Positions 1 to 44,713 of a stretch of 44,713 nucleotides of DNA are shown here, piece after piece (the first letter of the stretch is position 1; each line of letters starts with the position of its first letter). The translations under genes and the position numbers were made by a program. The DNA is from Octopus bimaculoides. Taxonomy: Eukaryota. The notes beneath the pieces are model-generated. The model made no database searches. It had not been told where the DNA came from and saw nothing but the letters and a program-made list of their open reading frames with translations. The stretch is taken from contig NC_068987.1 of NCBI RefSeq assembly GCF_001194135.2, positions 107,428,754 to 107,473,466 on the forward strand, written 5' to 3'.

Positions 1-122
1 TGAAGAAAACATTTTGTGTCTCACTGTGCGAGAATTGTTGTTTTTGTGGGCGTATCTCGCCTCCGAAAAACTTGTGAAAATGTTGCTGCTGGGCCCTGGA
101 TTACCGTTATTGGAATACCTTT

Positions 123-901
123 ACTGAATTTCACGCACGTCTTCCTGTGGTTGTGCTTAATGTCTCACTTAGCGGTGAGAAGAGTGTTTTGGACGTATCA
201 CTCCTCCCAAAATTGTGAACTTAGTTTGTAACAGTTTGTTGTTTACAAGCCATGATTTGAAAACTGCAAATAAATATTGTGAACTTTGTTTAAAAAAGAA
301 AAAGAATTTGTTGTTTTCAAACCACGTTTTGAAAGCTAATAGATTTGAAGAAAAGTCTTCCTCTTGCTTTGAACTACACCACGTGGAACCACGCAAAGGA
401 TTTAATTTTTACCAGCAAAGTGACGACTGCAGCGGAGCCGGGATCAAATCGGGCCGGAGTAACGGTCTGGCCTGAAAATTTGTTAATGAAATAAAGTAGC
501 ATTGCTTACCGAAAGGACATGTTTATTGTCGCTCCGGATTCACGTCGCTGAATGCCAGCGTCGTGAATTTTTGACGTACAACTACAGGTAAGACTTTTGT
601 GTTGTTGGGATTTAGGGGGCGGGGGGTTGTTGCTCTTGTTTATTTTTATGTCGAACAAGAATTCTCCACTGGATTCCACGCATTTGTTTGCCTGTGGTTG
701 TGCTTAAAGTCTCACTTAGCAGTGAGAAGAGTATTTTGGAGGTATCGCTCCTCCAAAAATTGTGAACTCGATTTGTAAAAGTTTGTCTTCAAATCATGAT
801 TTGTGAACCTTGTTTAAAAAAGAAAAGGAATTTATTGTTTTCAAACCAAGTTTTGAAAGCTAGTAGATTTAAAGAAAAGTCTTCCTTTTGCTTTGAACTA
901 C
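123..901 (+). repeat. Diverged direct repeat, copies ~123-377 and ~668-901 (second runs into gap), plus a shorter third partial copy at ~16-80
   Basis: cctgtggttgtgcttaa.gtctcacttagc.gtgagaagagt.ttttgga.gtatc...ctttgaactac occurs at 144-377 and 691-901 (offset ~547 bp, one internal indel). tgtctcact...gcgtatc...cctcc.aaaa.ttgtgaa also at 16-80. Confidence 0.85.
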
Positions 902-1249: not shown

Positions 1250-2296
1250 AAAAATAAGACCACTGCTGTGGAGTGGGAGATTATCCCACCCAAGAAGTGG
1301 TTAAATGATTTCAGGGAAAGAACGGTGGTGTTGCGGACCTACGCTAGGTTACTCGACACCATTACGGTCTTTCCCAAAGTGGAAATTGAAAAGGAGTTAG
1401 CAGAATATCTGCCAACTATTAAGTTTATGGCAAGGGGTGTAAAATACGCGACGGTTTGGTTGCTATTTGACACCCCTGAGGTGGCTCGCAAGTTTGCGAG
1501 CCAGCCCTTAGAAAGGGAAAAAATTCTGATTCTTCCCCCATACTGTGGGAAGAAATTAACTAGGACTTGGATCTGTGGGCTGCCACCCGGTATAGATCCT
1601 GATTGGATAGAGGATACTATCCGATGGGGGCTGGGGGGCAGTGGAACCAAGCTCTTAAATGTGAAACTGTTACCTACAGCTGATTGGGTTGGGACAAAAG
1701 CGGTTTTGACCCTGTGGACCCAATCAGCCAGGGATCTGGTATTTCCGGTTTTTTTGAGGATGGCCGGCCAGAAATATCCGGTAATTCTTGAGGGACGTAA
1801 ACCCAAGTGCCACCGGTGTCTGAAGCCCGGTCATATCAAGAAAGACTGTCCCCAGGACCAGAGTAGGGTCCTGGAACAGTTAACAAATGTTGTTACACCC
1901 CGCTCCCCCAATGGAGGGAGAGACGGAGGAAGTCGAGGATGTGGAAACCTCCAGGAAAAAAAGGAAGGTGGGCAAGAATGGTTGCCCACCGAAAATCGTG
2001 GGGGAGGAGGAGGACCTTCCAGCAAAGGCGGAAGTACGCCCTACTCCAGTGGCCCCAAAGAAAAAGAAAAAAAAGAACGAGGCACGGCCGGTACTCGATA
2101 GTGCACCGTCGGCGTGTCCCGACACTCCGTTGGTGGGAATTGTACCACCAACGGAGGAATTGTGCCGCCGACAGTAGAAGCTGTGGGCTCACCCTGTGAG
2201 GAAATGGATCGGCTAATCCTATTCCGAAAGGGAGGGGGCCCTGCAGAAATTTGTGAATAAAAGGAAGCGTCAGAGAGAGGGAGTCCTCACCTGTAC
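1250..2296 (+). pseudogene. ORF1 (gag-like nucleic-acid-binding protein) of an L1/Tx1-clade non-LTR retrotransposon; 5' end hidden in gap, probably frameshifted near 1885
   Basis: Open frame after the gap (KNKTTAVEWEII...) contains an RRM-like segment (TRTWICGLPPGIDPDWIEDTI) and VILEGRKPK-CHRCLKPGHIKKDC, a CX2CX4HX4C knuckle at 1808-1849. An acidic/basic low-complexity tail (EEVEDVETSRKKRK...PKKKKKK) continues in another frame from ~1887. Confidence 0.85.
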
Positions 2297-2805
2297 NNNN
2301 NNNNNNNNNNNNNNNNNNNNNNNNNNNNNNNNNNNNNNNNNNNNNNNNNNNNNNNNNNNNNNNNNNNNNNNNNNNNNNNNNNNNNNNNNNNNNNNNNNNN
2401 NNNNNNNNNNNNNNNNNNNNNNNNNNNNNNNNNNNNNNNNNNNNNNNNNNNNNNNNNNNNNNNNNNNNNNNNNNNNNNNNNNNNNNNNNNNNNNNNNNNN
2501 NNNNNNNNNNNNNNNNNNNNNNNNNNNNNNNNNNNNNNNNNNNNNNNNNNNNNNNNNNNNNNNNNNNNNNNNNNNNNNNNNNNNNNNNNNNNNNNNNNNN
2601 NNNNNNNNNNNNNNNNNNNNNNNNNNNNNNNNNNNNNNNNNNNNNNNNNNNNNNNNNNNNNNNNNNNNNNNNNNNNNNNNNNNNNNNNNNNNNNNNNNNN
2701 NNNNNNNNNNNNNNNNNNNNNNNNNNNNNNNNNNNNNNNNNNNNNNNNTCCAGCCCGTAGCTACTCTCTGTGTACTGCCTTTATGGCAAATTGAAATGAA
2801 ATAAA
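1250..2805 (+). mobile_element. L1/Tx1-like non-LTR element: ORF1, gap, 3' end ...ggcaaattgaaatgaaataaa
   Basis: ORF1 as above. 2749-2805 matches the reverse complement of 44393-44449 at 56/57 nt and ends in an A-rich aaatgaaataaa terminus. Linkage of ORF1 to this 3' end crosses an N-gap (2297-2748) and is inferred. Confidence 0.6.
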
Positions 2806-2846
2806 GTAGCTGGCCTACCAACCACAGGGTTCCGGGTTCAGTTCCA
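2806..2846 (+). mobile_element. Headless remnant of tRNA-derived SINE family 1, starting exactly after ...gtggtaa of the intact head
   Basis: gtagctggcctaccaaccacagggttccgggttcagttcca matches intact copy 4559-4836 (rc: tgtgtggtaa-gtagcttgcttaccaaccacatggttccaggttcagtccca); includes B-box-like ggttcag. Confidence 0.8.
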
Positions 2847-2964
2847 TATAGTCTTTGGACTAAATTTTTACACGCTAGGCCACTGGTAGTAGAAATTTCT
2901 AATATTTCTATTACCCTTCGATATTATATATAATTATATATATATTTATGTAAATCTCTTTTTG

Positions 2965-3113
2965 GGAATTGGATCTCGGAATATATTTAAAGCTGTAATT
3001 AATGTTATGTCAACATCACGTTGAAATATTCTTTTGGATAAGAAGATTCGCGCAGCTGTCGACTTGTTCAACCCAGTGTTTACAGCTTTATATGTACATC
3101 GAGATCCAATTCC
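2965..3113. repeat. 34-bp imperfect inverted repeat with 81-bp spacer (MITE-like or hairpin)
   Basis: Left arm 2965-2998 ggaattggatctcggaatatatttaaagctgtaa; rc of right arm 3080-3113 ggaattggatctcgatgtacatataaagctgtaa; 29/34 identical. Confidence 0.85.
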
Positions 3114-3728
3114 TAGAAATAATTATTTCATGTTCTTTTGAAGATTAATTAATTCATTTGACGTAGTTGCGTGCGCCTTTGTGTATGTACCACGAATCGC
3201 TTGACTGCCGGTGTTGGTTGGTTTACATCTCAGTTTCCTAGCAATTCGGCAAAAGCGTAAGATAGAATATCTACCATGTGCAAGAAGGTGACCCACCATG
3301 GTTTTAATCCAATGGCTGAAAACCAAATGTAAAGTGCAATAGTTTCGTCTACATATAAATAAACATTGCATGTATTATACGGGACTATGTACAAAGGACC
3401 CCACAAAGAATAGGCATTCAATTTATCGAAACCGAGAATTAATGCAAACTATATTCACCAAATATAAAATGAATAATTTCCAGATATATAACCTTATGTA
3501 CAATTATTCATTTTAGACAATTATTAATTTGCTTAAATATCTTTACAGACAGTAAGATTTAACTAAGTCGTATGATGACGATGAGATATGAACTGACTAT
3601 TAAATATAATTATTTTAAGTATACACTTTGTGCAAGAGGTTAGTGACCATGAATTCATAATCTTATTAATAATAATAACACATCTCATCTTATAATTTTT
3701 AACAATTTCATCAACCATCGACAATGAT

Positions 3729-4505: not shown

Positions 4506-4558
4506 ACGAGAGTAACTGGCCGAAACTGAAACAACGAACTCATACTCGACTGAAAATT

Positions 4559-4836
4559 GCTGAACCGCTAGTAACGGGGATGTAAACAAACCAGCATCGG
4601 TTGTCAAACGATGGTGGGGGGAGAAAAGCAAACATACATACACAAACACATACATACATATAAATTTAAAACGACGGGCTTTTTTCCAGTTTCTGTCTAC
4701 CAAATCCACTCACAAGGCTTTGGCCGGCCCGCGGCTATAGTAGAGGACACTTACCCAATGTGCCATACAGTGGGACTGAACCTGGAACCATGTGGTTGGT
4801 AAGCAAGCTACTTACCACACAGCCATACCTGCGCCT
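4559..4836 (-). mobile_element. SINE family 1, intact head (uninterrupted version of the putative LINE target site at 4805-4824)
   Basis: rc reads aggcgcaggtatggctgtgtggtaagtagcttgcttaccaaccacatggttccaggttcagtcccactg..., with A-box-like and B-box-like segments, short internal microsatellite and part of module 2. Confidence 0.9.
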
Positions 4837-4965
4837 GTGTAAGTAAATTCAAAAAATAAGAAGACGAAGAATAAAAATGAACATAAAGTAGAAGTTATAA
4901 AACTTGTTCCAGATTTTGAACTTGGAGCAACCATAATACTTTGGGATTGGTTTAGAAGGTGGTAT

Positions 4966-17501: not shown

Positions 17502-17634
17502 CGACAGGCTTCTTTCAGTTTCCTCTATCAAATACACTCCCAAGGCTTTAGTAGAAAACACTTGTCCAAGGTGCCACGCAGTAGGACTGAACCCGGAACT
17601 ATGTGGTTGGTCGGCAAGCTACTTAACACACAGC
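17501..17634 (-). mobile_element. SINE family 1 5' module with small internal deletion; head intact
   Basis: acgacaggcttctttcagtttcc...caaggtgccacgcagtaggactgaacccggaactatgtggttgg...caagctacttaacacacagc. Confidence 0.88.
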
Positions 17635-27803: not shown

Positions 27804-28240
27804 AGGCGTACGAGTGGCTTTATGGTAACTAGCTTGTTTACGAACCACATGGTTCCACGTTCAGTCCCACTGCGTCGCACCTTGGGCAAGTGCCTTCTAC
27901 TATAGCCTCGGGTCAACCAAAGCATTGTGAGTGGATTTGGTAGACGGAAACTGAAAGAAGTCCGTCGTATATATNNNNNNNNNNGACGGAAACTGAAAGA
28001 AGTCCGTCGTATATATATATATATATATATATATATAGGCGTGTGTGTATATGTTTGTGTGTTTGTGTTTGTCCACCCAACCTCACTTGACAATCGATGC
28101 TGGTGCATTTACGTGACCGTAACTTAGCGGTTCGGCAAAAGGGGCCGATCGAATAAGTCCTGGGGTCGATTTGCTCGACTAAAGCTGATGCCCCAGCATG
28201 GCCACCTTCAAATGACTGAAACAAGTAAAAGAATAAAAGA
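27804..28240 (+). mobile_element. SINE family 1, bipartite near-complete copy
   Basis: gagtggctttatggtaactagcttgtttacgaaccacatggttccacgttcagtcccactgcg...gaaagaagtccgtcgtata, microsatellite, then module 2 ending aaatgactgaaacaagtaaaagaataaaaga. Confidence 0.9.
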
Positions 28241-39131: not shown

Positions 39132-42100
39132 TTTTACTTTTAATCTGCATCTTTGTTACAGTCACTTATCTAGACACACCCAGCGTCCTGGGGCGAGTGA
39201 AGGATAAGAGATGTTACAATATTACTGAAAGCTTGAGGAGGAGAGGTAGTGAAATATTTTCATGCAATACAACACAGACCTTTAAATGGATGTGGGCAGT
39301 ACTTGCGAGCACAATCTTTTGCTCAGAGACATGGTTTTTCTGGGATCTTGTCTAGATGTTTCTGACATCCCTTTTTTTAGCACCCTCAATATCAGGAACA
39401 GTTCTCGTTTTAAGATGTCACATCATTTGTATTTCAATTTCCAGGTCCTTATGTTTACTTAGTTTGTCAAATTTCTTGACAGGTATATCTTTATCAGTGT
39501 ACAAGTATTTTCTTCCCTCTCTTTAATAATTATGTCCGGTCGATTAGCCTGGATCGTTCTGTCAGTGTTGACTGGAAAATCCCAGATGATAGTGACATTT
39601 TTACCTTCAACGACTGGCTCAGATTGATGTTCCCACCAGTAAGTAAGCGTGCTGATTTTGTAGTGTTTACATATTTTCCAATATAAATATTGTCCTACCC
39701 TTTCGTGGCGATTTTTATATCCGTTTGGTGTGCGCACAAGACATCCCGAGACGAGATGGTCTATTGTTTCATCAAATGTGTCGCAGAATCTGTATTCAGT
39801 GTCAGAACCGTTTTGAAGAACACTAGTCTGGTAGTTTTTTGTGAGCAATATTTGGTCTTGTGCTGCCAATATGAAACCTTCAGTCTCTGCTTTCAGTCCT
39901 GAACTTCTCAGTCACTGATGGGTTGTTGCTTGGTCTACATCAGCATTTCAACTCCGTGCAGAGGCTTCTGGCTCCAACGCTCCTCAATTTGCGTTTGCCC
40001 GTTTTTTTTTTTCTTTGAAGTCTCCTTGGTCCATTTTAATTGTTTTGTGGCAGTTGTTTCAGATTCTTCAAATATTTCAGGAGTAATGCCAAGTTCCCTT
40101 GCGAATTTGCAAGCTTCCTTGGAAATCGCACATGACTTTTTGCTGCTTTCGTGTACGCACACAATTCACAGCATCCAGTCCTCTGTACTAGATAAGTACT
40201 TGTTCATTGCTATTGCGGAGGTCTTATAGCACAGTTCTATCTGTATCATTCCTCTTCCCAATTACTTCTAGGCAGGTACAGACGATCGACATCTGCTTTT
40301 GGGTGGTGCATGTTTTTAGAAATAAATATTTTTCTTGTCTTCGTGTCCAGGCGTTGAAGCTCTGTAAGATTCCAGTTAATGATGTTAAAACTATATTAGA
40401 CTCCAGGAAGTGCCAAGGTGTTAATGGCTTCGATGTTTGAGTTCAGTTTTTCGTTACCTGATCGTGTCGCATAAACTTGTAGTGGTTTTGGGTAGGTCTA
40501 GGACATTCGTTTGTGATATGGGCAATGGCTTCGTGCGCTATATTGCAGATGCGGCACAGCGAAGACACTTGCTCATTCCTAAGATTGGCCTTCCATTTCT
40601 TGGTCAAAATTCGATCATGCGCTGCCACTATGTTCTTTACTTCATTGAATTCCCAGTTCAACAAGAGTGTTCGACCAGTCCTGAAATCTGAGCTAAATAC
40701 ATATCATAAGGTGTAAGCTAATACATTTCTTAGCAGCTCCAGTTTGATATTTATAATTTCAACAGGTTTCCGATCATCTCTTTCGTGCTTGTATGCTGAA
40801 TACCTGAGCCTCCATTTATTTCTCAGTATCTCTAAGATTGTTCCTGCTGAAGTTCGTTTATAACTGCGTCCACATCTATCACAACTGAATTTGAGGTCTT
40901 CAATTTTCCTTTCTGGAATGTGACCTTAGTACATTTGTGAAGACCAAACTCCCGCCTGAAGTTATCACTGTGTGCTCTCACACGATCTAATAGGCCTTCA
41001 AGGTCATCATTGACTTTGCCACAAAGTTTTAAGCCATCCATATAAAATAGATGGTTTATTTTCTCCTCAATTTTATATCCATACCCTGCTCTGCTAAGTT
41101 CCCTTGCAAGAGGTATTCAGGCTCTGCAGAAAATTAGATGTGAAAGTGAGTCACCTTGGAAAATTCTACAGCTAGATTTAATATTGTTTGTAGTCAGTAT
41201 TCCATTGGAATGGTATAATTGGAGATTCATATTGCACACTGATATGTTATACTTCAAGTTTGAAATTACAGGAGAAATTTTGAAGATGTCCAGCAGTTTC
41301 ATGGTTCATGAATGTGGTATGATGTTAAAGGCCTTTTTTATAATCAATCCATGCGGGACTGAGATTTCTGCATTTGTTATGATAGTTCCCAAAGAACATG
41401 CGATTAGTTAGGAGTTGATCTTTGCATCCATATGAACCTTCTCGGCACTCCTTTTGTCCAGTGGGGAAAATATCGTTCTATTCCATAAATGTGGACAATT
41501 TCCCCACGAGAATGGATGTTAAAATTTAATGAGTGATAGACAAACAGGACATGGGCCGATAGGCTTTTGGAACTTACGTAGTTTATTCTTTGGGAGTAAC
41601 CCATTTTCTGACAACCTCTCATATGTTCATTAAACAGCTGGACTAACTTACCGTGTGCGCACGGGAGTGATGCGAGCCAGGAATTTGGCAATCTATCTTT
41701 ACCGGGGAACTTCCACTTACGAGCCTTCTTGAGGGCCATCCTTCGGTCTGTTATTGTGACGACTTCCCGTGTTTGTTCTTTTAAATTTTGGTATGATCCT
41801 TCTGTGCGTCTAAACCAATCTACATTTTTATTATATCTTCTCATCACTACAGATCCTTTTCCAAAATTTTCAACTTCTTCCACAGGTGAGGCGTCCTCAA
41901 CAGTTATTTTCTGCTTCCCTATTTCTCTATAGAATGTTTTCGCATTGGACGTGTACGGCTTATTTTGCTTCTGAAGCGTTCTTTCTTTGTTCATATTTTC
42001 GGATTCTTTGCTTCGACTTTTTGTTTCAGCGTTTCTTTTGCTGAAAGCAGTTCTTCTCTTGGTGGGAATCTATAATATCTCTTCATTTTTCTTCCTTTTC

Positions 42101-44000: not shown

Positions 44001-44027
44001 ATTTGTCGCAATTATTTGAAATCATTA

Positions 44028-44392
44028 TCTCTTTTACTTGTTTCAGTCATTTGACTGCGGCCATGCCGAAGTACCGCCTTTAGTCGAACAAATCAACCCC
44101 AGAACTTATTCTTTGTAAGGCTAGTACTTATTCTATCGGTTTCTTTTGCCGAACCGCTAAATTACGGGGACGTAAACACACCAGCATCGGTTGTCAAGCG
44201 ATGTTGGGGAACAAACACAGACACACAAACACATATATACATACACATATATACGACGGGCTTCTTTCAGTTTCCGTTTACCAAATCCACTCACAAGGCT
44301 TTGATCAGCCCGAGGCTACAGTAGAAGACACTTGACCAAGGTACCACGTAGTGGGACTGAACCAGGCACCATGGGGTTGGTAAACAAGCTAC
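44028..44392 (-). mobile_element. SINE family 1, complete except for the first ~20 nt of the head
   Basis: rc starts gtagcttgtttaccaaccccatggtgcctggttcagtcccactacg and runs through both modules; the expected ...gctgtgtggtaa is replaced by the putative LINE 3' end. Confidence 0.92.
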
Positions 44393-44713
44393 TTTATTTC
44401 ATTTCAATTTGCCATAAAGGCAGTACATAGAGAGTAGCTACGGGCTGGACAAAAACATTAATGAGATGAAATGGATGATAAATATGCTGGTATAATGAGA
44501 GAAGGCAGAAGCCGCCCGCCGAACTTTGCTTCTCTATAACACTGTTCTTTATAAAATTAAATTTTCACATTGAGGCTATGAACCTCGTACATAAAAAGTC
44601 ATAATTTAAGGCATTTGCCTCTTACGATTTTTCATTACACAATATGAGGCACTCGTCTTCTTAGGTTTTTTCGCCCGATATAGCCTTCGCTTCTCTCAAG
44701 CAACACGATGGGT
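44393..44713 (-). mobile_element. 3'-terminal 321 bp of the same putative Tx1-like element as 2749-2805; continues beyond the window
   Basis: 44393-44449 rc equals 2749-2805 at 56/57 nt; ends ...ggcaaattgaaatgaaataaa at the SINE junction. Confidence 0.7.

What the first reader, a model, noticed from the sequence alone, without database searches (positions are those of the whole stretch)
2749..2846. Putative site-specific Tx1-like LINE that inserts at one exact nucleotide in a tRNA-derived SINE head
Seen: the same 57-bp sequence ending ...ggcaaattgaaatgaaataaa occurs twice, 41 kb apart and on opposite strands (2749-2805 +, 44393-44449 -). Both times it is followed immediately by gtagc... of SINE family 1, at the point where intact copies (4805-4824, 17617-17634) read tgtgt(g/t)(g/t)taa^gtagcttgc. 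The two SINE remainders differ from each other, which argues against one segmental duplication. An L1/Tx1 ORF1 lies just upstream of the first copy. Known: the Tx1 clade contains sequence-specific families (Tx1 into Tx1d transposons, Keno into U2 snRNA genes, Mutsu into 5S rDNA, Dewa into tRNA-array spacers). Inference: a Tx1 family targeting the D-arm/A-box region of tRNA-like sequence, using an abundant SINE as a safe harbour and decapitating its Pol III promoter.
Basis: partly seen in the sequence, partly recalled or inferred. Interest (0 to 1): 0.88.

Follow-up and report, generated by a model that had tools for sequence, protein, structure and literature searches.

The report
Retroelement that homes into a SINE head
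In this octopus genome window, retroelement copies ending in the same ~20-base tail are joined to exactly the same nucleotide of an abundant SINE three separate times, which suggests a target-specific LINE-type element using the SINE as a landing site; its enzyme gene and clade were not seen.

Summary
The 57-mer occurs twice (56/57 identical) and abuts GTAGC of the SINE head at the same nucleotide both times. I found a third junction at 495/496. The 16-mer AATGAAATAAA|GTAGC occurs 3 times against 0.09 expected.

The events look independent. The 57-mers differ at 1/57 positions, the SINE remainders at 8/41 (p=0.004). The third tail shares only its last ~20 nt with the 57-mer. At the third site an Octopus sinensis paralogue carries the uninterrupted SINE head, like an empty site.

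Site-specific retro-insertion between the A-box-like and B-box-like motifs of the SINE is the best reading (about 0.6).

Corrections:
- Copy 1 starts at the edge of a 452-N assembly gap, so "57 bp" is a minimum length and continuity with ORF1 is unproven.
- The real link to the ORF1 family is window 1-495. This gap-free, ORF-less stretch has a 5'UTR 80% identical to the one upstream of ORF1, and it carries the tail and junction.
- ORF1 is a genuine LINE ORF1 (tandem RRM-like folds plus a CCHC knuckle). It is homologous to the ORF1 of full-length endonuclease/RT LINEs in O. vulgaris and O. sinensis.
- No ORF2, 5' junction or target-site duplication was seen. Tx1 membership is untested.

This is a new member of a known kind, since Tx1-clade families already target other transposons.

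The parts
2749..2805 (+). 3'-terminal 57 nt of retroelement copy 1. Its 5' side is cut off by assembly gap 2297-2748. It ends ...GGCAAATTGAAATGAAATAAA.
   Evidence: 56/57 identical to 44449-44393(-); it starts at the first base after the N-run
2806..2846 (+). SINE head remainder (SINE positions ~25-65, containing the B-box-like GGTTCAGTTCC) that received copy 1. It belongs to an old, rearranged SINE.
   Evidence: 88-90% identical to intact heads over the 39-43 nt that align; 8/41 mismatches to copy 2's remainder
3178..3269 (+). Body fragment of the same old SINE. It is separated from its head by ~330 bp of other sequence, including a (TA)n tract and an inverted repeat.
   Evidence: 72.5% identity to 44219-44129
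44393..44713 (-). 3'-terminal 321 nt or more of retroelement copy 2 (the 57-mer is 44449-44393). It is non-coding in all frames and runs off the window end.
44022..44392 (-). SINE remainder (position ~25 to the 3' end) that received copy 2.
   Evidence: aligns to SINE copies at 4813-4557 and 27827-28236 starting at the junction
1..495 (+). 'Unit 1', an ORF-less relative of the ORF1 element. Bases 123-377 are 5'UTR-like, followed by 118 nt and then the tail AAATTTGTTAATGAAATAAA (476-495). It is gap-free and runs off the window start.
   Evidence: 80% identity of 123-377 to 668-901; last 20 nt match the 57-mer tail, 0/500 shuffles
496..510 (+). GTAGCATTGCTTACC, equal to SINE head positions ~25-38. 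This is the third target remnant. It is flanked on the left by unit 1's tail and on the right by the 5' end of the ORF1 element.
   Evidence: The O. sinensis paralogue L001 9452-9487 has the uninterrupted head GGCATGGCTGTGTGGTAA|GTAGCTTGCTTCC at this place.
511..901 (+). 5' untranslated region of the ORF1 element, with repeated monomers. It continues into gap 902-1249.
   Evidence: homologous to L001 9490-9779, which runs on into the ORF1 ATG
1250..2177 (+). LINE-type ORF1 with two RRM-like folds, one CCHC knuckle and a basic tail. It is frameshifted near 1885-1900 and its start codon lies in the gap.
4557..4838 (-). Reference SINE copy with an uninterrupted head: GGCGCAGGTATGGCTGTGTGGTAA|GTAGCTTGCTTACCAACC...
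27805..28236 (+). Reference full-length SINE copy with an uninterrupted head.

Best explanation
A family of non-LTR retroelements shares a ~20-nt 3'-terminal motif, AAATT(T)G(TT/A)AATGAAATAAA. Its members integrate by target-primed reverse transcription at one fixed position of the abundant octopus SINE head.

Inferred mechanism: the bottom strand is nicked opposite ...GGTAA^GTAGCTTGCTTACC..., and the 3' OH of ...GCTAC primes cDNA synthesis on the element's 3' tail. The element therefore ends up between the A-box-like motif (TGGCTGTGTGG, upstream) and the B-box-like motif (GGTTCAGTCCC, downstream). Two bases (AA) at the junction are ambiguous between tail and target.

The family includes ORF1-bearing copies and ORF-less 5'UTR+tail derivatives. 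These would be mobilised in trans by an endonuclease/RT ORF2 that was not seen here.

Shown: three independent, identical 3' junctions; uninterrupted targets; an empty-site-like paralogue; and the tail on a relative of the ORF1 element.

Inferred: the cleavage specificity, the trans-mobilisation, the 5' junction near SINE position 38 (a ~14-bp duplication, or target sequence carried along with the element), and the L1/Tx1-group identity of the enzyme.
For: 1. Three junctions AATGAAATAAA|GTAGC occur against 0.09 expected.
2. The events are independent. The 57-mers differ at 1/57 positions and the flanking SINE at 8/41 (p=0.0037). Copy 1's SINE is old and rearranged. The third tail shares only its last ~20 nt with the 57-mer (0/500 shuffles).
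3. Five SINE heads in the window run uninterrupted through the site.
4. At the third site the sequence downstream (496-780) is homologous to O. sinensis L001 9477-9779 (global score 46.5 against a shuffle maximum of 11). L001 has the intact head ...GGTAA|GTAGCTTGCTTCC there.
5. SINE similarity stops at about position 38 in both species' ORF1 elements. This is a fixed boundary, as expected of a 5' junction.
6. Unit 1 (1-495) is gap-free, has a 5'UTR 80% identical to the one upstream of ORF1, and ends in the tail and junction.
7. ORF1 is a LINE ORF1. tblastn E=2.7e-19 to the ORF1 that precedes an Exo_endo_phos + RVT_1 + zf-RVT ORF2 in O. vulgaris L006. Its fold is two RRM-like domains plus a CCHC knuckle.
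8. Precedent: many Tx1-clade families are target-specific, including for other transposons (PMC4494074). L1-Tx1 is recently active in O. vulgaris (PMC13282606).
Against: - Only three junctions are available, all from one gappy 45-kb window that was chosen because it showed them.
- No 5' junction, target-site duplication or ORF2/RT is visible for any of the three copies.
- Copy 1 abuts an assembly gap and copy 2 runs off the window.
- The 15-nt remnant at 496-510 is not an exact duplicate of 2806-2819 (2 mismatches plus 1 indel). A simple picture of one element flanked by a duplicated target site therefore fails, unless the left copy is carried in the element's RNA.
- In O. sinensis no SINE remainder follows the ORF1 element within 10 kb, and neither species has an ORF2 after this ORF1.
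- No 57-mer or junction was found in ~150 kb of O. sinensis, O. vulgaris and O. bimaculoides loci.
- The 57-mer shows no homology to the 3'UTRs of the full-length LINEs in L005 and L006.
Confidence: 0.6

Rival explanations
1. Template-switch chimeras. Reverse transcriptase copying a SINE RNA (or the ORF1-element RNA) reaches a fixed 5' end or block at the G of GTAGC. It then jumps to the 3' end of another retroelement RNA. The product, [tail]+[SINE lacking positions 1-24], lands at random genomic sites. This resembles U6-L1 chimeras or the 5' additions seen in SINEU.
For: It would also give a precise junction at one SINE nucleotide. Recurrent 5' additions to SINEs are documented (PMC4494074). 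No 5' junction inside a SINE head has been seen for copies 1 and 2. Divergence between the SINE parts could reflect different source subfamilies rather than age (inference).
Against: Copy 1's SINE is internally disrupted and only ~72-78% like the others, while its 57-mer is 98% identical to copy 2's. That fits a young insert in an old SINE. The third junction lies in a 15-nt head remnant followed by non-SINE sequence, which cannot fold like a tRNA to create a fixed RNA end. The O. sinensis paralogue has the head contiguous in DNA. The junction is in the D-loop-like region, not at position 26 or 37 where tRNA modifications that stop RT sit (own knowledge).
Confidence: 0.15
2. The 57-mer is the fixed 5' extension or alternative head of a composite SINE subfamily that amplified as one unit. 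It is not an insertion.
For: Both copies show the same junction. The upstream part of copy 2 is non-coding. Composite SINEs with replaced or extended heads are common (PMC4494074, PMC5786205).
Against: Divergence is not uniform across the junction: 1/57 against 8/41, p=0.0037. The third junction has a different upstream element and no SINE body. The extension would remove the A-box-like motif and provide no recognisable Pol III promoter; no RNA family matches.
Confidence: 0.1
3. The pattern has no biological specificity. It reflects a segmental duplication, gene conversion, an assembly artefact at repeat-bounded contig ends, or chance nesting of a common repeat in a very common SINE.
For: The window has 16 N-gaps and copy 1 sits at a contig edge. 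The window was selected because it showed the pattern.
Against: The flanks differ in sequence, length and strand. The SINE remainders diverge 7 nt past the junction, so each junction must be read-supported (inference). A 16-mer seen 3 times against 0.09 expected, in three different contexts, is not explained by chance nesting.
Confidence: 0.07

Closest known systems
Target-specific Tx1-clade LINEs (Tx1L into Tx1D; Tx1-Mar into Mariner-N4_AMi; Tx1-8_Crp and Tx1-4_AMi into LTR elements; Keno into U2 snRNA genes). PMC4494074.
   Same: A LINE-type element inserts at one position of a multicopy sequence, which can be another transposon. ORF1 has a CCHC knuckle. Relatives in the same genomes have an endonuclease/RT/zinc-finger ORF2. 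The 3' end is A-rich without a long poly(A).
   Different: The target is the head of a SINE, which the papers read here do not report. No ORF2 or RT of this family was seen, so clade membership is untested. The copies seen are ORF1-only or ORF-less.
rDNA-specific LINEs R1 and R2, and co-transcription with the target (as discussed in PMC4494074).
   Same: The 3' junction is precise. Target sequence may be carried at the element's 5' end; here that would be SINE positions 25-38 in front of the ORF1 element in two species. Tandem occupancy of one target is also seen.
   Different: R2 uses a restriction-like endonuclease and R1 a different APE lineage. Their target is a host gene array, not a retroposon. 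Co-transcription is only inferred here.
Non-autonomous LINE derivatives: internally deleted L1 (Bao and Jurka 2010, as cited in PMC4494074), Bov-A, and HAL1-type ORF1-only elements (own knowledge).
   Same: Unit 1 is a 5'UTR plus a 3' tail with the coding part missing. The ORF1 element has no ORF2 in either species.
   Different: Those families insert without a fixed target.
Dada DNA transposons that target tRNA and snRNA genes (PMC3706591, PMC8869645).
   Same: They use small-RNA-type multicopy sequence as a harmless landing site.
   Different: They are DNA transposons with a transposase. They target functional RNA genes, not SINEs.
L1-mediated chimeric retrocopies and 5' additions to SINEs (SINEU). 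PMC4494074.
   Same: They produce a fixed junction between the 3' end of one RNA and a defined point of another.
   Different: They arise by template switching and land at random sites. Here the SINE parts look older than the inserts.

Membership tests
Target-specific non-LTR retrotransposon | Independent copies share the identical 3' junction with the same target sequence | tested here: met
   Three junctions AATGAAATAAA|GTAGC sit in three different contexts.
Target-specific non-LTR retrotransposon | Unoccupied copies of the target exist, ideally an empty site at a homologous locus | tested here: met
   Five SINE heads in the window run uninterrupted through the site. O. sinensis L001 9452-9487 has the intact head where the window has tail|GTAGC. 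It is a paralogue, not a proven orthologue.
Target-specific non-LTR retrotransposon | Fixed 5' junction, with a target-site duplication or deletion of constant length | tested here: inconclusive
   SINE similarity ends at about position 38 in front of the ORF1 element in both species. No element has both ends visible. 496-510 and 2806-2819 differ by 2 mismatches and 1 indel.
Target-specific non-LTR retrotransposon | Encodes (or is mobilised by) a reverse transcriptase with an endonuclease | tested here: inconclusive
   No ORF2 homologue is in the window or downstream of the O. sinensis ORF1. More distant ORF1 homologues in L005, L006 and L015 are followed by an Exo_endo_phos+RVT_1+zf-RVT ORF2.
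Tx1 clade (L1 group) | The RT domain of ORF2 groups with Tx1 in a phylogeny | not testable with these tools
   No ORF2 of this family is available, and there is no reference LINE set.
Tx1 clade (L1 group) | ORF1 with RRM-type domain(s) followed by a CCHC knuckle (type-I ORF1p; own knowledge) | tested here: met
   zf-CCHC at residues 186-202. AlphaFold model with pLDDT 82. Best structural matches are tandem-RRM proteins NONO/SFPQ and UP1. This feature is not exclusive to Tx1.
tRNA-derived SINE (SINE2) as the target | The head is recognisably tRNA-like, with A and B boxes | tested here: inconclusive
   A-box-like TGGCTGTGTGG and B-box-like GGTTCAGTCCC are visible. ARAGORN finds no tRNA. Rfam finds no tRNA match at the gathering score over the whole window, nor at E<=10 on the one intact head that was scanned.
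Composite SINE subfamily with a 57-mer head extension | Uniform divergence across the junction and a common 5' terminus | tested here: not met
   1/57 against 8/41 mismatches, p=0.0037. The 5' termini are not visible.

The most novel reading that the evidence does not exclude
An L1/Tx1-group lineage in octopus homes to a ~14-20-bp site inside the head of the genome's most abundant SINE. It includes ORF1-only and ORF-less riders that keep only a ~20-nt 3' recognition tail. Insertion splits the SINE's A-box-like and B-box-like promoter motifs. Repeated hits on the same target stack elements head to tail. In this reading a LINE uses a SINE as both a safe harbour and a victim.
Probability: 0.35. 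Interest if true: 0.65.

Novelty: new member of a known kind. Interest (0 to 1): 0.5.

Why it matters
Target-specific LINEs are natural examples of programmable, RNA-templated site-specific integration. Each new endonuclease/target pair adds a data point on how APE-type endonucleases acquire sequence specificity.

A SINE head would be an unusual target. It offers a very large number of neutral landing sites. Each hit would probably inactivate a SINE source copy, which sets up a LINE-against-SINE interaction that could shape octopus repeat dynamics. SINEs and LINEs each make up about 12% of the O. vulgaris genome (PMC13282606).

There is also a practical point. Precise nesting of this kind confuses repeat libraries and short-read assemblies. 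The gaps around these copies illustrate that.

Tried and rejected
- **Exact look-ups of window ORFs** across or near the junctions found nothing on record.
- **Protein search with the peptide spanning the junction** found no candidates.
- **Collection scans.** The 21-mer junction gave nothing in metagenome contigs and two chance bacterial hits in genome contigs. A SINE-core pattern gave nothing in metagenomes. No further same-species DNA could be pulled by pattern.
- **RT C-terminal query from the degenerate LINE at 39.4-42 kb** returned unnamed ENA contigs. The one fetched (L002) has no octopus SINE.
- **About 150 kb of O. sinensis, O. vulgaris and O. bimaculoides loci** hold no 57-mer and no tail|GTAGC junction.
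- **RNA folds of the tails** are no better than shuffles.
- **Homology between the tails and the SINE's own 3' end** is not significant (p 0.1-0.5). There is no evidence that the SINE is this element's partner.
- **Homology of the 57-mer or unit-1 tail to the 3'UTRs of the full-length LINEs** in L005 and L006 is not significant.
- **Similarity of unit 1's tail to window 2240-2267**, just after ORF1, is marginal (p=0.03). I did not rely on it.
- **SINE similarity beyond position 38 in front of the ORF1 element** is not significant. I dropped the idea that a whole SINE head is embedded there.
- **The first AlphaFold run** on a 2-sequence alignment gave pLDDT 43 and was unusable.
- **PDB and Pfam sequence searches on ORF1** gave only the zinc knuckle.

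Full report
**What is there.** The window is a gappy octopod scaffold with 16 N-runs. The closest proteins are from Octopus sinensis, O. vulgaris, O. bimaculoides and Argonauta. An O. bimaculoides locus shows the same gap style.

The 57-mer sits at 2749-2805(+) and 44449-44393(-), 56/57 identical. In both places the next bases are GTAGC... of the abundant SINE. In uninterrupted copies that point reads GGCGCAGGTATGGCTGTGTGGTAA|GTAGCTTGCTTACCAACC.

Copy 1 starts at the very first base after the N-run 2297-2748. So 57 bp is a lower bound, and the ORF1 'just upstream' is separated from it by an assembly gap. Copy 2 continues for at least 321 nt, non-coding in every frame, and leaves the window.

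**A third junction.** The 16-mer AATGAAATAAAGTAGC also occurs at 485-500. That makes three hits against 0.09 expected, and 0 of 100 shuffles reached three.

Here the tail AAATTTGTTAATGAAATAAA resembles the 57-mer's AAATTGAAATGAAATAAA over its last ~20 nt (0/500 shuffles). It does not resemble it further upstream. Downstream only 15 nt are SINE-like: GTAGCATTGCTTACC, positions ~25-38. The sequence then becomes the 5' region of the ORF1 element. SINE similarity beyond that point is not significant (p=0.23).

**Independence of the events.** The two 57-mers differ at 1/57 positions, but the adjoining SINE segments differ at 8/41 (Fisher p=0.0037). Copy 1's SINE is also broken by ~330 bp of foreign sequence, and its body at 3178-3269 is only 72% identical to copy 2's.

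This pattern fits a young insert in two old SINE copies. It does not fit a segmental duplication or one amplified composite unit. The third junction has a different upstream element and a different downstream context.

**Empty-site-like comparison.** Window 496-780 is homologous to O. sinensis L001 9477-9779. The global score is 46.5 against a shuffle maximum of 11, and BLAST agrees. That stretch of L001 leads into the orthologous or paralogous ORF1 (77% nucleotide identity).

At the position of the window's tail|GTAGC junction, L001 reads ...GGCTGAGGCATGGCTGTGTGGTAA|GTAGCTTGCTTCC. This is the SINE head from its own 5' end, uninterrupted. In both species SINE similarity stops at about position 38. 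That is the behaviour of a fixed 5' junction, about 14 bp downstream of the 3' junction. It could also be target sequence carried along at the element's 5' end.

**Link to a LINE.** Window 1-495 has no Ns. Bases 123-377 are 80% identical to 668-901, the 5'UTR that precedes ORF1. In O. sinensis that UTR runs straight into the ORF1 ATG. In unit 1, by contrast, 118 nt and the tail follow directly. Unit 1 is therefore an ORF-less relative of the ORF1 element, and it carries the tail and the junction.

ORF1 (1250-2177, frameshifted near 1890, start in a gap) has one CCHC knuckle. With a 48-sequence alignment it gives a confident model (pLDDT 82) whose best structural matches are tandem-RRM proteins.

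It has 71 relatives. All of those that carry a name are from octopods. It is homologous (tblastn E=2.7e-19) to the ORF1 that precedes a 1132-aa Exo_endo_phos + RVT_1 + zf-RVT ORF2 in O. vulgaris L006, and to similar ORF1s in O. sinensis L005 and L015.

So it is a genuine L1-group LINE ORF1. However, this particular ORF1 subfamily has no ORF2 after it in either species. Clade assignment to Tx1 could not be tested.

**Most likely mechanism.** Target-primed reverse transcription at a sequence-specific nick. On the bottom strand the cut would be 5'-...AGCTAC^TTACCACA-3'. The exposed 3' end primes on the shared ~20-nt tail. Two A's are ambiguous between tail and target.

The shared tail on otherwise unrelated 3' regions is what a stringent RT-recognition signal would look like. 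It would let ORF1-only and ORF-less derivatives ride on an autonomous partner. The arrangement tail|15-nt remnant|next element at 476-520 is what repeated hits on one target would give.

The insertion lies between the A-box-like and B-box-like motifs, so it would split the presumed Pol III promoter. All of this paragraph is inference from the junction anatomy and from the known biology of target-specific LINEs (PMC4494074).

**Weak points.** The evidence is three junctions in one pre-selected window. No 5' junction, duplication or ORF2 was seen. Bases 496-510 are not an exact copy of 2806-2819. No SINE remainder lies within 10 kb downstream in O. sinensis. No further copies turned up in ~150 kb of other octopus loci. 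The 'tRNA-derived' label rests only on box-like motifs, because ARAGORN and Rfam do not see a tRNA.

The main rival is template switching at a fixed RNA end. It is disfavoured by the age contrast between inserts and SINE parts, and by the third site, which is not tRNA-like. It is not excluded.

**Comparison with known systems.** Many Tx1-clade families are target-specific, and several target other transposons: Tx1D, Mariner-N4_AMi and LTR elements (PMC4494074). L1-Tx1 families are recently active in O. vulgaris (PMC13282606). Four literature searches found no LINE reported to target a SINE head, but the library is incomplete.

If confirmed, this is a new member of a known kind with an unusual target, not a new principle. 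Interest is moderate (0.5). Probability that site-specific insertion is right is about 0.6. Probability that it is a Tx1/L1-group lineage behaving as in the novel reading is about 0.35.

Noticed in passing
L006 4440-19184 (O. vulgaris OX597840.1) and L015 (O. sinensis CM016867.1): Head-to-tail tandem arrays of full-length LINEs (ORF1 of 372 aa plus ORF2 of 1132 aa with endonuclease, RT and zf-RVT). In L006 there are three units with a period of ~5278 bp, 99.1-99.7% identical, joined tail (...GGGTAAATAAAATAAAA) to head with no obvious spacer. The same family is arrayed in O. sinensis. How such arrays form is unexplained.
   Followed up: partly
L005 9720-9780 and 15340-15370 (O. sinensis CM016872.1): A LINE with ORF1 and ORF2 homologous to the L006 family is flanked on both sides by (ATT)n/(TTA)n microsatellite. 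This hints at microsatellite-specific insertion, as in Kibi, Koshi or Dong. It rests on a single copy.
   Followed up: no
L005 9080-9365: A ~285-bp palindromic, MITE-like insert with terminal inverted repeats sits inside an otherwise normal SINE copy.
   Followed up: no
window 2847-3177: The old SINE that received copy 1 is interrupted by ~330 bp. This stretch contains a (TA)n tract and a 40-bp inverted repeat (2959-2998 against 3080-3119, 82%). It may be a small foldback or MITE insertion.
   Followed up: no
window 39422-42069 (- strand): A degenerate, multiply frameshifted LINE ORF2. Its 150-aa C-terminal domain has 411 relatives with E<=1e-10 in unnamed ENA eukaryotic contigs (best 66-72% identity). 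It is unrelated to the finding.
   Followed up: partly
window 1-901 and L001 9600-10000: The 5'UTR of the ORF1 element is built of repeated ~70-140-nt monomers (GTCTCACTTAGCGGTGAGAAG...) whose number differs between copies. It also contains a conserved splice-donor-like CAG|GTAAGA (586-594; TAAG|GTAGGC in O. sinensis). The meaning is unknown.
   Followed up: no
L008-L013 (Logan contigs, SRR11869384-94): Six near-identical ~1.7-kb contigs, probably transcripts, encode a 294-aa distant ORF1 homologue with no ORF2 on the contig. At least one ORF1-only member of this superfamily therefore appears to be expressed in some octopod.
   Followed up: no
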